Virus record (IMG/VR): IMGVR_UViG_3300042562_001598
Location: 62,001-126,000 of that record
Reading direction: 5' to 3' (one strand)
Length of the DNA: 64,000 bases
Every line of letters starts with the position of its first letter. The stretch's first letter is position 1. The notes below the pieces were generated by a model, which was not told the DNA's origin, searched no databases, and saw only the letters and a list, made by a program, of their open reading frames with translations. Shown one piece after another: positions 49,298-64,000 of this stretch. A program made the position numbers and the translations under genes.

Positions 49298-50908
49298 ATG
49301 AATTTAATAAAATCAATAAAAGCTTTAATAACTGAAGCGTCAAAGAAGAAAATCCTAATGGATAAACTTGGGTTTAATGAAAACCAAGCGGAAATGTTAG
49401 ATAGTTTATGTGGACCCTTAGCTGTATGGATGGGTAATAAATTACTTAAGTTTTTTTCTGATTATCATGGGGGTATGACTCAAGAATTAAACCCTGAAGA
49501 ATTAAAAAAGACATCAATTAATTTGGTTAATCAAAACAATTTAGTTCGCAGACAACGAGAACAAATAGTATCCATTATGGATTATATTAGAGTTGGGTTA
49601 GACGGAAATGTTTCAACGATTAAAGATTTATTTTATGATGAGTTATATAACGAATCAAATCAGTGGCATCAATCTTTGGGAACCAAAGATGGTGATATTA
49701 ATTATAAAGAAGAACATCCTATTGTTGTTGATTTTAGAAATGAAGATGGTCTTGGGTTTTATTGGGTTGATACAGAAACTAATGATTGTTCGGAAGAATC
49801 CCGGAGAATGGGACATTGTGGTAGAACAGATAGAAGTAATAGCGTTTATTCTTTGAGAGAATTTAAGAAACTTAAAGATAAATATACGATTAACAAAAGT
49901 CACTTGACTGCGGCGATTGGTGATAGAGATGGTATATTATACCAATTAAAGGGTCCTCACAACTCAAAACCGAAAGAAGAATACCATAACTACATATTAC
50001 CATTGTTTTATGTTTTGGGGGGTGATGGTGGAGAAGCTGGATACTTAATTCAAGGGTTTGGTTCAGAATATCAAAGTCAAGAAGATTTCAAGCTTACTGA
50101 TTTACCTGAAGAGGTGCTAAAATCATTATATAGTAATAGACCTGAATTGTTTAACACAAGAAGTTTAAAGAACAAATTAGCAGAATTAGGTCTTATAGAA
50201 AAACCTGAGTACGATTATAATGTAACCATTGATATTGACCCAGGTCGTCTTTCATATTATATTGATGGTGATTATAAAGTGGGAAGTTATAAAAAGAAAA
50301 CACCTGCTGGTAATGATTATAGTGTTGATGTTTTTTTATTTGATAAAATAATGGGTGGTGATACCTGGGAATTTTGTGGTTCAGATTCTGATGATTGGTC
50401 TGGTGCTCTACAATATTATGTGAATAGTGAAAACGAAAAGCGAATTGAGGAAATGGTTAAGGAAATGGCTTCAAGTAATAATCCAGATTTTGATGAGGAT
50501 GAATTTAACGAATTAAGTCTTGATGAAAAAATTGAGGAATATGATGAAGATTACGATATTAGAAACGCTTTAAACAGGGCTTATGATGATGCTTGTTGTA
50601 GTGAATATACTGATTATTTGTATGATACATTAAGAGGTGCGGTTGAGGAGTATGGTAAGATTATTAGATTTGATGATGAACGAGTTATTTTTGAGGTTAA
50701 TATAGAAAGTTATATAAATGAACTTGATGATGAGATTTTTGACGAACATCTTGAAAACTGTAATGATGATTTAGCATGTGTTTTTGAGGAGATGATTGGT
50801 CAAGGTGATGTTGATAAACCTGAATATAGTACTGACGACCGGTGGTCTCCGGATATTGATTATGGAAACTATAATGAAATATTGAGTGACCGACTATCGG
50901 ATATATAA
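49298..50908 (+). CDS. PcfJ-like domain protein with leader and acidic C-terminus
   Basis: EESRRMGHCG, VYSLRE, SHLTAAI, YQLKGPHNSKP; leader MNLIKSIKALITEA; TATTTAT at 49275. Confidence 0.65.
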   Translation: MNLIKSIKALITEASKKKILMDKLGFNENQAEMLDSLCGPLAVWMGNKLLKFFSDYHGGMTQELNPEELKKTSINLVNQNNLVRRQREQIVSIMDYIRVGLDGNVSTIKDLFYDELYNESNQWHQSLGTKDGDINYKEEHPIVVDFRNEDGLGFYWVDTETNDCSEESRRMGHCGRTDRSNSVYSLREFKKLKDKYTINKSHLTAAIGDRDGILYQLKGPHNSKPKEEYHNYILPLFYVLGGDGGEAGYLIQGFGSEYQSQEDFKLTDLPEEVLKSLYSNRPELFNTRSLKNKLAELGLIEKPEYDYNVTIDIDPGRLSYYIDGDYKVGSYKKKTPAGNDYSVDVFLFDKIMGGDTWEFCGSDSDDWSGALQYYVNSENEKRIEEMVKEMASSNNPDFDEDEFNELSLDEKIEEYDEDYDIRNALNRAYDDACCSEYTDYLYDTLRGAVEEYGKIIRFDDERVIFEVNIESYINELDDEIFDEHLENCNDDLACVFEEMIGQGDVDKPEYSTDDRWSPDIDYGNYNEILSDRLSDI

Positions 50909-51040
50909 TTTGACTTTCAACTAAAATTGATTATTATTCTTCTTCATTAAAGAAATGATTATGGAAAGAGAATATAGAAAAGGAACAATTTTTTTAGTAA
51001 GTTTAATGATTATTATAATAACAACTTTACTCATAATATT

Positions 51041-51262
51041 ATGAAATATTTGATAAATACAAAAGACAAAACAATAACCCTATTGGATAGTGGTGATAAT
51101 CTTACAGATGTTAAGGGTTTATTGGAAACCTTCAAGGACTATACTTTGACACCAAATATTGATAATACGGAGAATAAAACGACTATTAAACCTAAAAAAA
51201 TACATCCAGTATCATATAGAGAAGGTTATATTGATGGTATTCAGTCAGTTGTAGGTAATTAG
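51041..51262 (+). CDS. Hypothetical protein; C-terminus shared with 51579..51875
   Basis: Ends YREGYIDGIQSVVGN. Confidence 0.55.
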   Translation: MKYLINTKDKTITLLDSGDNLTDVKGLLETFKDYTLTPNIDNTENKTTIKPKKIHPVSYREGYIDGIQSVVGN

Positions 51263-51486
51263 AATTTTTTTTATAAAATAATTCACTTTTGTTTTGGTGG
51301 AATGGAATTTAATTGTATTTTTGTGGTGTAGAAATGAAACAACAACCATAAAAAAAATATAGAAATTATGAAAACTACTACCTTCACAATGCAAGAAATC
51401 TGGATGGCTTCAAGACCAAATGTTCAAAAGAACAAAAAGAAGTATGTGAGAAAAGATAAACACAAAAAAAACGAGAAATAATAATG
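51219..51486 (+). repeat. Direct repeat copy 1 (268 bp)
   Basis: Near-identical to 51832..52098 (4 substitutions and a 1-nt A-run indel seen). Confidence 0.95.
51368..51481 (+). CDS. 37-aa basic peptide, ArfA-like, copy 1
   Basis: MKTTTFTMQEIWMASRPNVQKNKKKYVRKDKHKKNEK after TTTG-N19-TAttTTTG. Confidence 0.55.
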   Translation: MKTTTFTMQEIWMASRPNVQKNKKKYVRKDKHKKNEK

Positions 51487-51578
51487 AACAAGTAAAAAAA
51501 GTTATTGAAACATTGCAAGCACTAATTCAATAATTTTATGTTTTATACACCTTGTTATGTTTAGTTAATTTTAATAAT

Positions 51579-51875
51579 ATGGATTTTACTGGAGCATATA
51601 AACATTATAATGAACAATTAAAAGAAAGATTTAATTCTGAAATCAGTATTGAAGAGTATATTAATACTCGTGTATTTAAACGGACATTAAAGAAAAAATA
51701 CGTTGGTAAATATGTAAGATACTTATTTGGTGATATTGTAAATGTTTATTATGTTACGAAAAAATTTGAGTATCCAATAACTGTATATAAATTAGATAGA
51801 TTTAACAAAGGTAAGATATTACGGACTTACCGAGAAGGTTATATTGATGGTATCCAGTCAATTGTAGGTAATTAG
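51579..51875 (+). CDS. Hypothetical protein; C-terminus shared with 51041..51262
   Basis: Ends YREGYIDGIQSIVGN. Confidence 0.55.
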   Translation: MDFTGAYKHYNEQLKERFNSEISIEEYINTRVFKRTLKKKYVGKYVRYLFGDIVNVYYVTKKFEYPITVYKLDRFNKGKILRTYREGYIDGIQSIVGN

Positions 51876-52098
51876 AATTTTTTTTATAAAATAATTCACT
51901 TTTGTTTTGGTGGAATGAAATTTAGTTGTATTTTTGTGGTGTAGAAATGAAACAACAACCATAAAAAAATATAGAAATTATGAAAACTACTACCTTCACA
52001 ATGCAAGAAATCTGGATGGCTTCAAGACCAAATGTTCAAAAGAACAAAAAGAAGTATGTGAGAAAAGATAAACACAAAAAAAACGAGAAATAATAATG
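51832..52098 (+). repeat. Direct repeat copy 2 (267 bp)
   Basis: Near-identical to 51219..51486. Confidence 0.95.
51980..52093 (+). CDS. 37-aa basic peptide, ArfA-like, copy 2
   Basis: Identical peptide to 51368..51481. Confidence 0.55.
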   Translation: MKTTTFTMQEIWMASRPNVQKNKKKYVRKDKHKKNEK

Positions 52099-52374
52099 GC
52101 AACATTAGAAACTCAATATAGGAACTATTTATTAGATAATCCTAATTCTCAAATAACTTTTGAGCAATGGAAAAGTGATATATTGATGCCCCCAATTAAA
52201 GTTACCTTAAAGGACATAGATAAGAAGTTAAAAGAAGATTTCTTACGGTCAAAGGGTTGGTCAACTGTATGGCATGATGACAATTGGGTTGATAATCAAA
52301 ATCCTGATTTAGTTGGGACGACATTAGACAAGGCTTATCAATATGCTAAAGAGAATTTAGACTTATATATGTAA
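52096..52374 (+). CDS. Hypothetical protein
   Basis: 92-aa ORF. Confidence 0.6.
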   Translation: MATLETQYRNYLLDNPNSQITFEQWKSDILMPPIKVTLKDIDKKLKEDFLRSKGWSTVWHDDNWVDNQNPDLVGTTLDKAYQYAKENLDLYM

Positions 52375-52402
52375 GTCATAACAAGTTAAAAAAAAATAGA
52401 AG

Positions 52403-52648
52403 ATGAGTAAACCAATTTTTATTGTTAGATTTCCTTATTACACTAGTGAGGAGAATGCGTTGAAACAGATTACACAAATAAAACAAAGTAACATCAGTGA
52501 GGAGTATAACATTTTGGGTATTAAGGATGATACTTTAGATGGTGGTGTTAAATTTGAGTGTTATAATTCTGAGTATACAGAAATTGAGTTTAAGGCGTTA
52601 GAGGAGCGAGTTTTAACCCTTATGGATAAAACTGATGATGTAATATAG
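52403..52648 (+). CDS. Hypothetical protein
   Basis: 81-aa ORF. Confidence 0.6.
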   Translation: MSKPIFIVRFPYYTSEENALKQITQIKQSNISEEYNILGIKDDTLDGGVKFECYNSEYTEIEFKALEERVLTLMDKTDDVI

Positions 52649-52650
52649 TA

Positions 52651-52834: not shown

Positions 52835-52996
52835 ATGAGAAGATTGTTGTGTTTTTTAGGGTTCCATAATTGGAGAAATATTCAGAATGAGAAACCTGAT
52901 GCTATTGATGGTGAGAAAATACATTATGTTAATTTACATATTTGTGAGGGATGTGATAAATATTCTGGTAAATATATGGGTTATGTTACAAAATAA
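52835..52996 (+). CDS. Small DUF1660-like Cys/His protein (not in ORF track)
   Basis: MRRLLCFLGFHNW...ICEGCDK. Confidence 0.55.
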   Translation: MRRLLCFLGFHNWRNIQNEKPDAIDGEKIHYVNLHICEGCDKYSGKYMGYVTK

Positions 52997-53004
52997 TAGA
53001 AATT

Positions 53005-53397
53005 ATGAAAGTGATTATCACTGAAAGACAAAGAAAACTATTATCCGAAGACGAGGATAGAGATTTTTTAGTTAAGAAAAAAATTGCAAAAAAAGAATTA
53101 ACAAAACGCTTTGGTGATTTGATACCTTATGAGACCAAAGATATTCCTGATTACTTTTTTTATATTGATGAAAATAAAAATATTTATTTTGAGTGTAATA
53201 AAAAAAATGGTGAAGTCTGGGTAGATAATAAAACAATTAGGTCATTTTTAAAAGAAATTTTTTCATTTAATTACAAACAAATTCAACAGGTTATAAAAGA
53301 ATGGTTGGGAGAACATTACAAATTAGATGTGACAAAAACCATCAGGTCTCCCAATACTGTGCATCAATATGTTGCGAGAACATTACAAAATAAATAA
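53005..53397 (+). CDS. Hypothetical protein with MKVIITERQ leader (family with 46820, 9955)
   Basis: IAKKELTK(R/K)FGDLI...FYIDE...KEWL.EHY.L shared with 46820. Confidence 0.65.
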   Translation: MKVIITERQRKLLSEDEDRDFLVKKKIAKKELTKRFGDLIPYETKDIPDYFFYIDENKNIYFECNKKNGEVWVDNKTIRSFLKEIFSFNYKQIQQVIKEWLGEHYKLDVTKTIRSPNTVHQYVARTLQNK

Positions 53398-62618: not shown

Positions 62619-63078
62619 GTTAACAAATAATGAGAAAAAAGGGATTAACTTGAGTGTTAAAGGTCTTGCTAAAACATATCCTTTTGTTAAGGGGTGGGAT
62701 TATAATGAAAATTCTGATGATTATAGATACTCACTTTATATTAATCTATTAATTGACCCTATTGAATCAATTAATTTTATTCGTGAAAAATATGGGATTG
62801 AGTTTTATCCTTCAAGAACATTAATTGATATGATTACTAACAGACCTGACGAATACGAAACACCTGTTTTAATGTTGTATGCTTCGGTTGAAGGTGAAGG
62901 TGGTGAAATGATGGGTAGTAGTAATGAGGCTTGGTCTGATACATTTAATAAATTATATGATATAAAATTGGAGATGGTTGAAAGGTTAAATGACAAATAT
63001 AATATGTTACCTGATGAATATAAAGTTCCTAAAGCATTATCACTTCAGAGATATAGAATAACTCCAGAAAAAAAATAA
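62611..63078 (+). CDS. Hypothetical protein, tandem paralogue 2
   Basis: ELTNNEKKGINLSVKGLAKTYPFVKGW. Confidence 0.65.
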   Translation: MIELTNNEKKGINLSVKGLAKTYPFVKGWDYNENSDDYRYSLYINLLIDPIESINFIREKYGIEFYPSRTLIDMITNRPDEYETPVLMLYASVEGEGGEMMGSSNEAWSDTFNKLYDIKLEMVERLNDKYNMLPDEYKVPKALSLQRYRITPEKK

Positions 63079-63080
63079 TT

Positions 63081-63854
63081 ATGAATTTACAGGAAAATAT
63101 AGTAAGGATTAGAGAGATGATGCTTGCTGAGGAGATGGTGCAATCTGATGCTTGGAAAATGATTAAGAAATCAATAGATATTCTTAAGAAGAAAGATAAG
63201 GTTTTATTATTGAGTTGTTCCAATAGATACAATTGGAATGAAGAAAACATAGACATTCCAAAGTCAAAGATGATTGCAATGTATATCCAAGATGAGTTGG
63301 GTGATAAGGCGGTCTTAATTGATGTTCCAGAACTTAATATATTACCTTGTGAGGGCAATGTTTCAAGAAAGGATGGTAATAGTTGTGGTTTATTAAAAGC
63401 GTTGCTTAAAGATAAGGATAAGAACCCCTCCGGTAATCATAGATGTTGGGCAAGTTATAACAATCCTAAAGATGAGTTATGGAAAGTATCCAAGGAATTG
63501 TTTGAGTCTGACACTGTAATATTTTTTAGTTCTATAAGATGGGGACAGACTAATATGTATTACCAAAATTTAATTGAGAGGTTAACTTGGATTGAGAATA
63601 GACACGCAACACTTGGTGAATCAAATATAGTTAAGGATATTGAGAGTGGGTTTATTTGTACAGGTCAAAACTGGAATGGTGAGAATGTTACTGGAACTCA
63701 ATTAAAGGTACACGAATTTTATGGGTTTAAACCGAATGATGATTTATATTGGAATTGGCAATACACTAAAGATGTTAATGATGAGACGAAAAAATCTTAT
63801 AAGGAATCACATAAAAAATTCATAAAAGACACGAAGATACCTGAAAATAAATAA
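63081..63854 (+). CDS. Flavodoxin-fold / NADPH-dependent FMN reductase-like protein with leader
   Basis: VLLLSCSNR, LNILPCEG, D.VIFFSSIRWG, LIERL; leader MNLQENIVRIREMMLAEE. Confidence 0.7.
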   Translation: MNLQENIVRIREMMLAEEMVQSDAWKMIKKSIDILKKKDKVLLLSCSNRYNWNEENIDIPKSKMIAMYIQDELGDKAVLIDVPELNILPCEGNVSRKDGNSCGLLKALLKDKDKNPSGNHRCWASYNNPKDELWKVSKELFESDTVIFFSSIRWGQTNMYYQNLIERLTWIENRHATLGESNIVKDIESGFICTGQNWNGENVTGTQLKVHEFYGFKPNDDLYWNWQYTKDVNDETKKSYKESHKKFIKDTKIPENK

Positions 63855-63872
63855 AAAATTTGTTTTATAATT

Positions 63873-64000
63873 ATGAAATTACAGGAAAATATAGACAGAA
63901 TGAAATCAATGATGGGTTTAATTGGTGAGGGTACGGATAAACTTACCAATAAATTAATTGATAATTTTAGTAAAGAGTTTAATTACACTAGATTAGCTAA
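63873..64000 (+). CDS. Partial CDS (3'-truncated) with MKLQENIDRMKSMMGLIGE leader
   Basis: Open to the window end; same leader type as 63081. Confidence 0.6.
   Translation, partial: MKLQENIDRMKSMMGLIGEGTDKLTNKLIDNFSKEFNYTRLA

What the first reader, a model, noticed from the sequence alone, without database searches (positions are those of the whole stretch)
51368..52093. Duplicated early-promoter cassette encoding an ArfA-like basic peptide
Seen: two identical 37-aa ORFs (below the ORF-track cut-off), each behind its own TTTG-N19-TAttTTTG promoter and a tiny MKQQP uORF. Established: the ribosome-rescue factor ArfA has a basic core of the form R...KKGKGSYxRKxKH that enters the mRNA channel. 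This peptide has RPNVQKNKKKYVRKDKHK. Inference: a phage ribosome-binding peptide for rescue or translation hijack, with doubled dosage.
Basis: partly seen in the sequence, partly recalled or inferred. Interest (0 to 1): 0.6.

Follow-up and report, generated by a model that had tools for sequence, protein, structure and literature searches.

The report
Duplicated phage cassette encoding ArfA-tailed mini-protein
A 282-kb phage of Bacteroidota-type hosts carries two copies of a small promoter-driven cassette for a real, conserved 37-residue protein whose basic tail matches, position for position, the part of the bacterial ribosome-rescue factor ArfA that plugs into the empty mRNA tunnel, so it may be the first virus-encoded protein of this kind, though no function has been tested.

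Summary
A 268/267-nt direct repeat (51219-51486 and 51832-52098) holds the last 14 codons of the upstream gene, a Bacteroidota-type promoter, a 5-codon mini-ORF and an identical 37-aa ORF.

The ORF is a real gene:
- 68 cluster representatives match it over its full length.
- Third-codon-position changes dominate among 26 distinct homologues.
- Close relatives carry the same cassette, with an intrinsic terminator.

The ArfA resemblance is more than composition:
- ArfA is the top hit of the family profile in the whole PDB (E 0.028).
- hhalign against an ArfA alignment gives P 9e-4.
- Only 1 of 20,000 tail-only shuffles of ArfA reaches the real score.
- The family's near-invariant residues fall on ArfA's conserved R26, K31, K34, Y39, R41, K42, K44 and H45.

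It is still not an ArfA family member. Pfam ArfA does not match, the KGKGS motif is missing, the N-terminus differs, and there is no non-stop-mRNA regulation.

The repeat-unique-repeat layout looks like cassette-mediated recombination (as with T4 PeSL elements) rather than selected double dosage.

Function is inferred only. My preferred reading is binding in a vacant ribosomal mRNA tunnel, for rescue or blockade. Generic nucleic-acid binding remains a serious rival.

The parts
51219..51486 (+). Repeat copy 1 (268 nt): last 44 nt of gene A, promoter, mini-ORF, 37-aa ORF, and the ATG of a vestigial ORF
51832..52098 (+). Repeat copy 2 (267 nt): last 44 nt of gene B, promoter, mini-ORF, 37-aa ORF, and the ATG of gene C
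51293..51323 (+). Bacteroidota-type promoter 1 (-33 TTTG, 19-nt spacer, -7 TATTTTTG)
   Evidence: 12 sites against 4.3 expected; the same architecture is found in relatives L019, L020 and L175
51906..51936 (+). Bacteroidota-type promoter 2
51334..51351 (+). Mini-ORF 1 (MKQQP, stop TAA). It starts 10 nt after the -7 box, so it is probably almost leaderless
   Evidence: ATGAAACAA at the same 10-nt spacing is conserved in L019, L020 and L175 while the flanking bases have diverged
51947..51964 (+). Mini-ORF 2 (MKQQP)
51368..51481 (+). 37-aa protein gene, copy 1. The protein has a short N-terminal helix (residues 8-15) and an extended basic tail with K21-N-K-K-K-Y26-x-R28-K29-x-K31-H32
51980..52093 (+). 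37-aa protein gene, copy 2 (identical at the nucleotide level)
51041..51262 (+). Gene A (73 aa, unknown function). Its last 14 codons lie in repeat copy 1. Its N-terminal 36 aa have a homologue in relative L175
51484..51495 (+). Vestigial ATG AAC AAG TAA, at the position where copy 2 has the start of gene C. It marks the right-hand junction of the repeat
51579..51875 (+). Gene B (98 aa, unknown function), the unique gene between the two cassettes. It shares only its last 16 residues with gene A
52096..52374 (+). Gene C (92 aa, unknown function), the first gene downstream of cassette 2. No terminator lies between them

Best explanation
SHOWN. The window is part of a 282-kb phage that carries Bacteroidota-type promoters. 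A 612-bp rearrangement has left two copies of an expression cassette: host-type promoter, 5'-proximal mini-ORF, then a 37-aa gene. The two copies bracket an unrelated small gene (B). The 37-aa product belongs to a conserved small-protein family found in metagenomic contigs whose neighbourhoods look like phage. The predicted protein has one short helix followed by an extended basic tail. The tail's near-invariant positions (R16, K21, K24, Y26, R28, K29, K31, H32) align with the conserved ArfA residues R26, K31, K34, Y39, R41, K42, K44 and H45. [quoted passage not shown]

INFERRED. The tail threads into a vacant mRNA tunnel of the host ribosome, so the protein senses or occupies ribosomes that have no mRNA downstream of the P site. 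I favour, modestly, an ArfA/ArfT-like outcome: release-factor-assisted recycling of ribosomes stalled on mRNAs truncated during infection. The alternative outcome is a plain tunnel plug that blocks host mRNA loading.

The duplication is best explained by recombination through the cassette. Single-crossover integration of a circular 'gene B + cassette' element, or an unequal exchange, gives exactly this repeat-unique-repeat layout, as shown for PeSL elements of T4-type phages. Extra dosage would be a side effect.
For: Real gene:
- 68 representatives of 50%-identity clusters match over the full length, best E 3e-9.
- Among 26 distinct homologous core sequences, differences by codon position are 0.25/0.20/0.55.
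- Relatives L019, L020 and L175 have the same promoter, mini-ORF and gene, followed by an intrinsic terminator.

ArfA-like tail:
- The family profile against all PDB sequences puts ArfA first (E 0.028), and 4 of the 6 hits are ArfA constructs.
- hhalign against an ArfA alignment gives P 9.4e-4, 23 columns, 48% identity.
- The family HMM scores E. coli ArfA at 17.4 bits. No whole-sequence shuffle of 20,000, and only 1 tail-only shuffle of 20,000, reaches that.
- In protein-language-model feature space, ArfA is one of only three Pfam families among the 30 nearest clusters.
- The column conservation of the family matches the ArfA invariant columns.

Literature:
- ArfA residues 25-29 pair with the RF2 beta-sheet; residues 31-48 sit in the mRNA tunnel; truncation after M40 abolishes activity (PMC5378476).
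- The Lys-His motif contacts the 16S rRNA backbone at U534 in both ArfA and BrfA (PMC6881298).

Structure and distribution:
- AlphaFold2 predicts a helix at residues 8-15 and a tail without regular structure, mean pLDDT 78.
- The exact tail motif occurs on at least five unrelated N-terminal regions, in small ORFs from MAGs labelled with different phyla. This fits a universally conserved target.

Duplication:
- Junction anatomy, single copy in relatives, and the PeSL precedent (PMC2839356, PMC4122927).
Against: - The Pfam ArfA model does not match, even at E<=10.
- The similarity covers only about 23 residues. It is weaker to divergent ArfAs: 9.4 and -0.9 bits for two non-enterobacterial ones. 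hhalign probability is only 22%.
- KGKGS is absent, and the N-terminus has no detectable similarity to the RF2-binding minidomain of ArfA.
- The phage itself has no RF-1 domain, S21, CCA-adding enzyme or PTH2 genes that would give a translation context.
- Some tail-bearing ORFs lie in virion modules. Two are fused to a DUF1064 / Holliday-junction-resolvase domain, which suggests DNA binding.
- There is no expression or binding evidence of any kind.
Confidence: 0.42

Rival explanations
1. The protein is a generic nucleic-acid-binding basic peptide. The tail would bind a DNA or RNA backbone non-specifically, for example as a nucleoid- or genome-associated, packaged or ejected protein, or as an RNA chaperone. 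The resemblance to ArfA would then be convergence on backbone binding.
For: - The tail is fused to a DUF1064 / Holliday-junction-resolvase (phrog_190) domain in L080 and L150.
- A family member lies among portal and connector genes in L172-L174.
- 99 tail-motif ORFs lie inside a scaffold-like gene next to portal and terminase genes in marine Flavobacteriia podovirus relatives.
- The ArfA tail itself binds mainly the rRNA backbone electrostatically (PMC5378476).
Against: - Non-specific basic tails usually conserve charge, not exact residues. Here Y26 is invariant, and R28, K29, K31 and H32 are 87-99% conserved across 69 sequences.
- The order of residues matters: only 1 of 20,000 tail shuffles reaches the real score.
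- Many members lie in early-like blocks of small genes behind their own promoter (window).
- Cultured relatives of the marine podoviruses lack the ORF, so it is accessory rather than a core virion part.
Confidence: 0.3
2. The peptide acts on some other conserved host target, such as RNA polymerase, the membrane or a defence system, or serves as an anti-defence or regulatory micro-protein. The tail would then be only a solubility or localisation element.
For: - No family annotation exists: DUF7230 and phrog_6310, phrog_18092 and phrog_2701 are all of unknown function.
- Genomic contexts are heterogeneous.
- The N-terminal helix (T-x-Q-E-I-W-x-A) is itself well conserved and could be the functional part.
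Against: - The tail is the most conserved part of the protein, and it is the part shared between sub-families with unrelated N-termini.
- The only structurally characterised protein it resembles is ArfA.
Confidence: 0.15
3. Only the promoter cassette matters, as a mobile regulatory or recombination module. The 37-aa ORF and the mini-ORF would be incidental, or the repeat would be an assembly artefact.
For: - The repeat-unique-repeat architecture resembles the PeSL regulatory cassettes of T4-type phages.
- No terminator separates the ORF from the downstream genes, so each cassette also drives genes B or C.
- Reads could not be inspected.
Against: - The ORF has full-length homologues in 68 clusters, with a wobble-dominated substitution pattern.
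- The ORF half of the repeat has no differences between the copies, while the other half has five.
- In relatives the ORF forms its own promoter-to-terminator unit.
Confidence: 0.05

Closest known systems
ArfA (alternative ribosome-rescue factor A, Pfam PF03889; E. coli YhdL)
   Same: - Both are small proteins with an extended basic C-terminal segment.
- Conserved residues coincide: R..V.KNKK, then Y.RK.KH including the Lys-His motif.
- Both proteins end a few residues after KH, as in the active truncated ArfA.
- ArfA is the top PDB hit of the family profile.
   Different: - There is a three-residue deletion where ArfA has GKG, so KGKGS is lost.
- The N-terminus is unrelated and shorter: 15 residues with one helix, against the 25-residue RF2-binding minidomain.
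- The gene has an ordinary stop codon, with no RNase III or terminator hairpin that would make a non-stop mRNA.
- It is phage-borne with Bacteroidota-type signals, not chromosomal in beta- or gamma-proteobacteria.
- The Pfam model does not match.
ArfT (Francisella) and BrfA (Bacillus), release-factor-dependent rescue factors
   Same: - All are 40-70-aa proteins that combine a basic tunnel-binding tail with a lineage-specific N-terminal part.
- BrfA shares only the Lys-His motif with ArfA (PMC6881298). ArfT is about 40 aa (PMC6299226).
- This shows that such factors arise repeatedly and escape homology searches.
   Different: - No sequence similarity to either was detected here. BrfA is in the PDB but was not hit.
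- The ArfT tail (KKGGSTNKK) is different.
Pfam DUF7230 (PF23876) and PHROGs 6310, 18092 and 2701 (all of unknown function)
   Same: - All are roughly 40-aa proteins whose C-terminal half matches the tail.
- 57 of 69 family members give weak DUF7230 hits, best E 4e-6.
   Different: - The window protein scores 14.6-16.3 bits against a cut-off of 27.
- The match covers the tail only.
- No function is attached to any of these families.
PeSL (promoter-early stem-loop) mobile regulatory cassettes of T4-type phages (PMC2839356, PMC4122927)
   Same: Nearly identical promoter-bearing cassettes flank a variable small gene. The repeat-unique-repeat layout is the expected product of recombination through the cassette.
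   Different: - Here the cassette is about 268 nt and carries a protein-coding gene plus a mini-ORF.
- No stem-loop is present in this genome.
- Only two copies exist in the genome.
Lambda bar-type minigenes and 5'-proximal upstream ORFs
   Same: A 3-5-codon ORF sits at the very 5' end of the transcript. The ATG AAA CAA start is conserved in three relatives at the same distance from the promoter.
   Different: - There is no evidence of peptidyl-tRNA drop-off or regulation.
- The leader is unstructured.
- The mini-ORF is absent from more distant family members.

Membership tests
ArfA (PF03889) | Match to the curated family model above its gathering score | tested here: not met
   hmmscan lists no ArfA hit at E<=10. 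A six-frame search of the whole phage genome with PF03889 gives no match at E<=10.
ArfA (PF03889) | Conserved KGKGS motif in the tunnel-binding tail | tested here: not met
   Alignments place a three-residue gap opposite the GKG of ArfA. The family has KNKK-KY where ArfA has KNKKGKGSY.
ArfA (PF03889) | Conserved basic positions of the tunnel segment, including Y-x-R-K-x-K-H (the Lys-His motif contacting 16S U534) | tested here: met
   Y26 is present in 69/69 sequences, R28 in 68, K29 in 67, K31 in 65 and H32 in 60. These align to ArfA Y39, R41, K42, K44 and H45. Shuffle control p is about 5e-5.
ArfA (PF03889) | Hydrophobic N-terminal minidomain (A18, L19, L24, F25) that engages the RF2 switch loop | tested here: not met
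   No alignment extends upstream of R16/R26. The N-terminus is 15 residues with one predicted helix at residues 8-15.
ArfA (PF03889) | Synthesis from a truncated non-stop mRNA (hairpin inside the ORF) under tmRNA control | tested here: not met
   An in-frame TAA lies five codons after KH. No hairpin or terminator is present in or after the ORF. No Rfam match.
ArfA (PF03889) | Binds non-stop 70S ribosomes and recruits RF2 for peptidyl-tRNA hydrolysis | not testable with these tools
   A co-fold of the peptide with a Flavobacteriaceae RF2 gave no verdict. This needs biochemistry.
DUF7230 (PF23876) | Match above the gathering score (27 bits) | tested here: not met
   The window protein scores 14.6 bits and 16.3/15.9 bits. 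57 of 69 relatives give sub-threshold or weak hits, best E 4.2e-6. The family is related through the tail but is not a clear member.
Bacteroidota sigma-A promoter | -33 TTTG and -7 TAnnTTTG separated by about 19 nt, upstream of a gene | tested here: met
   Exact matches at 51293-51323 and 51906-51936. The motif is enriched, 12 sites against 4.3 expected. It is conserved in relatives. Activity was not tested.
PeSL-type mobile regulatory cassette | Near-identical promoter cassettes flanking a variable ORF | tested here: met
   The two copies are 98% identical and bracket gene B, which has no relative in the syntenic phage L175.
PeSL-type mobile regulatory cassette | Stem-loop or terminator element joined to the promoter | tested here: not met
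   No terminator-like site lies in 50800-52650. Relatives L019 and L175 do have a terminator after the peptide gene.

The most novel reading that the evidence does not exclude
Phages of Bacteroidota hosts, and perhaps of other phyla (the contigs carrying the tail are labelled with several phyla), widely encode 'mini-ArfA' proteins. Each would have a universal mRNA-tunnel-binding tail (KNKKKYxRKxKH) joined to a lineage-specific N-terminal head. They would let the virus recycle, or commandeer, ribosomes left without mRNA when host or phage transcripts are cut during infection or by defence nucleases. In marine Flavobacteriia podoviruses the same protein appears to be overprinted in an alternative frame of the scaffold-like gene. 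This would be the first virus-encoded alternative ribosome-rescue (or tunnel-plug) factor, and a route to finding such factors in phyla where none is known.
Probability: 0.3. Interest if true: 0.85.

Novelty: new variant of a known kind. Interest (0 to 1): 0.62.

Why it matters
Release-factor-dependent rescue factors (ArfA, ArfT, BrfA) are tiny and lineage-restricted. They were each found by genetics, because homology searches fail, and reviews explicitly expect more of them (PMC8012679).

A conserved phage family that carries the ArfA tunnel-binding signature would have several consequences:
- It would show that viruses manipulate the 'empty mRNA tunnel' state of ribosomes.
- It would give a simple sequence signature for finding further factors.
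- It would provide short natural peptides that may bind the tunnels of many species, which is of interest for antibiotic design.

If the tail is instead a general nucleic-acid clamp, the family is still a widespread, unannotated phage micro-protein. This locus is also a clean example of cassette-mediated gene shuffling outside the T4 group.

Tried and rejected
Searches that found nothing:
- tblastn of the peptide and of two relatives against 50,697 cultured phage records found nothing. BLAST's low-complexity filter probably masks the tail, so this says little.
- A megablast of the locus against the same phage records found nothing.
- No tRNA genes were found, no Rfam match, and no stable leader structure. 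An RNA-element explanation is rejected.
- RF-1 domain, S21, PolyA_pol and PTH2 searches of the phage genome were all negative.
- NCBIfam: no family matches.

Alignment-based locus searches failed for lack of a conserved 7-10-column block. I used a degenerate DNA pattern instead.
- Swiss-Prot RF2 references for Bacteroidota were not held.

No verdict:
- The co-fold of the peptide with a Flavobacteriaceae RF2 gave no answer. I do not count it either way.

Corrected during the work:
- I first read the more than 120 viral-contig motif hits as strong phage enrichment and as evidence that the family sits in structural modules. In fact 99 of the 142 hits are one lineage in which the ORF is embedded in another gene. 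I withdraw the raw enrichment figure.
- The mini-ORF is not a family-wide feature. It is seen only in the closest relatives.
- A sample of 151 genomes around one MAG gave only 2 ArfA genes, so my ArfA alignment is dominated by enterobacteria.
Full report
1. WHAT IS IN THE SEQUENCE

The window is bases 62001-126000 of a 282-kb viral record that is estimated 96% complete. GC content is about 29% and almost all genes are on the + strand.

At the reported place there is a direct repeat, 51219-51486 and 51832-52098 (268 and 267 nt). Each copy contains, in order:
- the last 44 nt (14 codons plus stop) of the upstream gene;
- a promoter of the Bacteroidota type, TTTG-N19-TATTTTTG (51293-51323; 51906-51936);
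- 10 nt;
- a mini-ORF, ATG AAA CAA CAA CCA TAA (51334-51351; 51947-51964);
- 16 or 15 nt of A-rich leader;
- a 37-codon ORF (51368-51481; 51980-52093);
- a second TAA and an ATG.

In copy 2 that ATG starts gene C (52096-52374). In copy 1 it is followed by AAC AAG TAA, which is a vestige.

Between the copies lie 345 unique bases that hold most of gene B (51579-51875, 98 aa). Genes A (51041-51262) and B share only their last 16 residues.

The copies differ by four substitutions and one single-base indel. All five lie in the first 132 nt. The 136 nt that contain the ORF are identical. The chance that all five fall in that half is about 0.03.

The promoter pattern occurs 12 times in the window against 4.3 expected, and 0 of 100 shuffles reach 12. 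This is the only long direct repeat in the window, and there are only two copies in the genome.

2. IS THE 37-AA ORF A GENE?

Yes, on four lines of evidence.
- An exhaustive phmmer search of 1.84 billion cluster representatives found 68 proteins at E<=1e-3 (best 3e-9). They are 35-97 aa long and align over residues 1-36 at 50-75% identity.
- Conservation is position-specific: T7, Q9, E10, I11, W12, A14, R16, P17, V19, K21, N22, K23 and K24 are conserved. Y26 is present in 69 of 69 sequences, R28 in 68, K29 in 67, K31 in 65 and H32 in 60.
- In 26 distinct DNA versions of the 26-codon core, taken from fetched loci, pairwise differences fall 25%, 20% and 55% on codon positions 1, 2 and 3. This is the signature of purifying selection in this frame.
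- The closest relatives (L019, L020, L175; about 75% identity) carry a single copy of the same unit. It has TTTG-N19-TTACTTTTG, 10 nt, ATG AAA CAA TAA, 26 nt, the gene, and then a clear intrinsic terminator.

L175 is a true relative of this phage. It has homologues of the 536-aa upstream protein (44% identity) and of the N-terminal half of gene A.

AlphaFold2, run with the family alignment, predicts a helix at residues 8-15 and no regular structure in residues 16-37 (mean pLDDT 78).

3. THE ARFA QUESTION

Membership fails.
- Pfam ArfA gives no hit for the protein at E<=10, nor for the six-frame translation of the whole phage.
- NCBIfam gives nothing.
- The only family-level hits are weak and of unknown function: DUF7230 at 14.6 bits (cut-off 27), and phrog_6310, phrog_18092 and phrog_2701.

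Resemblance holds.
- A profile of the family, searched against all 177,635 distinct PDB sequences, returns ArfA as the best hit (E 0.028). Four of the six hits are ArfA constructs. No ribosomal protein, SmpB, ArfB or BrfA appears.
- I fetched E. coli arfA from the annotated K-12 record and collected relatives plus two divergent ArfAs. I aligned them and ran hhalign against the family. The result was P 9.4e-4, 23 columns, 48% identity and 22% probability.
- As a composition control, the family HMM scores E. coli ArfA at 17.4 bits. None of 20,000 whole-sequence shuffles reaches this, and only 1 of 20,000 shuffles confined to residues 26-50 does.
- Other enterobacterial ArfAs score 5.8-16.9 bits. 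The two divergent ArfAs score only 9.4 and -0.9 bits.
- A language-model feature search lists only three Pfam families among the 30 nearest clusters: Phage_L5_Gp78, DUF7230 and ArfA (score 0.90, 193 shared features). I treat this as a lead only.

The alignment is R16-x-x-V19-x-K21-N-K-K24-(gap of 3)-K-Y26-x-R28-K29-x-K31-H32 against ArfA R26-x-x-V29-x-K31-N-K-K34-G-K-G-S-Y39-x-R41-K42-x-K44-H45. The family's most conserved positions therefore coincide with ArfA's invariant ones.

The literature gives the meaning of these residues:
- ArfA residues 25-29 pair with the RF2 domain-2 sheet.
- Residues 31-48 fill the mRNA tunnel.
- K44-R48 reach the tunnel entrance at S3, S4 and S5.
- Truncation after M40 abolishes ribosome binding (PMC5378476).
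- The Lys-His pair contacts U534 in both ArfA and BrfA (PMC6881298).

The differences are also clear:
- The G-K-G of KGKGS is missing.
- The N-terminus is unrelated to the RF2-activating minidomain of ArfA.
- The gene ends at a normal stop codon five codons after KH, with no internal hairpin. The ArfA-type non-stop-mRNA control is therefore absent.

4. HOW WIDE IS THE TAIL MOTIF, AND WHERE DOES IT SIT?

A degenerate DNA pattern for K-N-K-K-K-Y-x-R-K-x-K-H gave 22 places in one genome each of 185,579 prokaryote species, all of them MAG contigs. In almost all cases the motif lies 3-9 residues before the stop of a 40-75-aa frame.

Important correction. Ninety-nine of these 142 hits are one lineage in which the frame is embedded, shifted by +2, in the acidic N-terminal part of a roughly 400-aa scaffold-like gene. 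That gene follows the terminase (phrog_6681) and portal (phrog_6547) genes. The phages involved are related to Flavobacterium Elemovirus, Maribacter phage Panino and Cellulophaga phages. The raw count is therefore not a measure of phage enrichment.

The remaining 43 hits are free-standing. They carry the same tail on at least five unrelated N-terminal regions, in contigs labelled Bacteroidota, Gammaproteobacteria, Campylobacterota, Clostridia, Patescibacteria and others. Two of them are fused to a DUF1064 / Holliday-junction-resolvase domain.

Contexts of full-length family members vary:
- blocks of small unknown genes behind their own promoter (this window);
- overlapping the start of a PolyA_pol-family (CCA-adding-type) gene, with ClpS nearby;
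- among portal and connector genes.

This phage itself has no RF-1 domain, S21, PolyA_pol or PTH2 genes. The neighbours of the cassette are of unknown function, apart from a DNA methyltransferase 3 kb downstream.

5. THE EMBEDDED MARINE ORF (SIDE FINDING)

Acidic GAA-rich coding sequence gives lysine-rich alternative frames for free. Panino shows such a frame without the motif, and Elemovirus has none. Even so, a codon-position test argues that the embedded frame is itself under selection.

In the 20 codons upstream of the motif, a region not constrained by my search pattern, differences among 76 sequences fall 46%, 29% and 25% on scaffold-frame positions 1, 2 and 3. In other words, the scaffold wobble position is the least variable and the peptide-frame wobble position is the most variable.

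In a control stretch of the same gene the values are 28%, 18% and 54%, at the same overall identity of 72-73%. This suggests an overprinted gene. It needs an unbiased sample to confirm, because the loci were chosen for having the motif.

6. THE MINI-ORF AND THE LEADER

ATG AAA CAA, starting exactly 10 nt after the -7 box, is identical in this phage and in L019, L020 and L175, while the bases on either side have diverged. The stop follows after 1 or 3 further codons. The frame relative to the main ORF is not conserved.

Other promoters of this type in the window end 18-25 nt before their ATG. The mini-ORF would therefore begin within a few nucleotides of the 5' end of the transcript.

The leader has essentially no structure (MFE 0 to -0.4 kcal/mol, less than shuffled controls), and no Rfam family matches. 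More distant family members have no such mini-ORF.

A 5'-terminal loading or re-initiation role is a reasonable guess. Nothing here tests it.

7. THE DUPLICATION

The layout is repeat, unique segment, repeat. The repeat runs from inside the 3' end of the upstream gene exactly to the ATG of the next gene, a vestigial three-codon frame follows copy 1, and relatives hold one copy.

A simple tandem duplication cannot create the unique segment. Two routes give this product directly:
- single-crossover integration of a circular 'unique + repeat' element at a resident cassette;
- unequal exchange between genomes that carry the cassette at different places.

That is the behaviour described for PeSL promoter cassettes in T4-type phages (PMC2839356, PMC4122927).

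No terminator follows either ORF here, so each cassette also drives the downstream genes. Double dosage of the peptide may result, but it need not be the selected feature.

8. MECHANISM AND ODDS

Shown:
- a real, conserved, promoter-proximal phage micro-protein;
- an ArfA-like tail, matched in residue order and not merely in composition;
- a recombination-type duplication.

Inferred: the tail occupies a vacant ribosomal mRNA tunnel.

I put about 0.42 on ribosome-tunnel binding. Within that, rescue through a release factor is somewhat more likely than a pure plug. I put 0.30 on generic nucleic-acid binding (virion- or DNA-associated), 0.15 on another target, and 0.05 on an incidental ORF or an artefact.

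A co-fold with a Flavobacteriaceae RF2 gave no verdict and is not used as evidence.

Searches of the held open-access literature found no report of a phage-encoded ArfA-like factor.

9. VERDICT

Its ArfA analogy is supported as 'works like', at the level of sequence statistics, but refuted as 'is a member of'. Its dosage idea is probably secondary.

I class the protein as a new variant of a known kind. It is of above-average interest because a simple biochemical test could reveal a virus-encoded factor that targets the empty mRNA tunnel.

Noticed in passing
L043-L162 (about 99 loci, for example L048:3157-3276, L045:6936-7055); also L027, L032, L033: In marine relatives of Flavobacteriia podoviruses, a 40-aa ORF with the same KNKKKYxRKxKH tail is embedded in the +2 frame of the acidic N-terminal region of the scaffold-like gene just after the portal gene. 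In the overlap the wobble position of the scaffold frame is the least variable (0.46/0.29/0.25). A control part of the same gene gives 0.28/0.18/0.54. This suggests an overprinted gene. The cultured relatives Elemovirus and Panino lack it.
   Followed up: partly
L080:4408-5007 and L150: A 200-aa protein in which a DUF1064 / Holliday-junction-resolvase-like nuclease domain (phrog_190) is fused to a C-terminal region ending in the same tail motif. This bears on whether the tail binds DNA or the ribosome.
   Followed up: partly
L014:5001-5126, L015, L016, L017: A 41-aa family member overlaps by 8 nt the start of a 526-557-aa PolyA_pol-family (CCA-adding-type) gene, with a ClpS gene about 2 kb downstream, on contigs up to 149 kb. 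The -7-like box TATATTTG sits 4 nt before its ATG, which suggests a leaderless mRNA.
   Followed up: no
L011:11217-11369: A relative of this phage (its homologue of the 536-aa upstream protein is 50% identical) encodes a 50-aa protein ending in ...YSRKNKHKKDWN. This is a second, more distant tail-bearing small protein, and it also weakly matches phrog_2701.
   Followed up: partly
window 52987-53010: The translation-start context of the peptide gene (AATAGAAATTATGAAA) recurs before the 130-aa gene at 53005. This looks like a preferred A-rich initiation region without a Shine-Dalgarno sequence, in keeping with a Bacteroidota-type host.
   Followed up: no
window 63075-63122 and 63867-63914: A 48-nt direct repeat (81% identity) covers the starts of two adjacent genes, which are probably tandem paralogues.
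   Followed up: no
window 11468, 19050, 20351, 21992, 33597, 35325, 45871 (+ strand): Further exact TTTG-N17-21-TAnnTTTG sites. Several of them end 18-25 nt before the ATG of the next gene (11524, 19105, 20399, 33648, 35378). This gives a usable promoter map for the phage.
   Followed up: partly
window 49298-50908 and L004-L011, L175: The 536-aa protein upstream of the cassette is conserved at 44-52% identity in at least nine other viral contigs. It has no Pfam family and only a weak phrog_29343 hit. It serves as a marker gene for this phage group.
   Followed up: no
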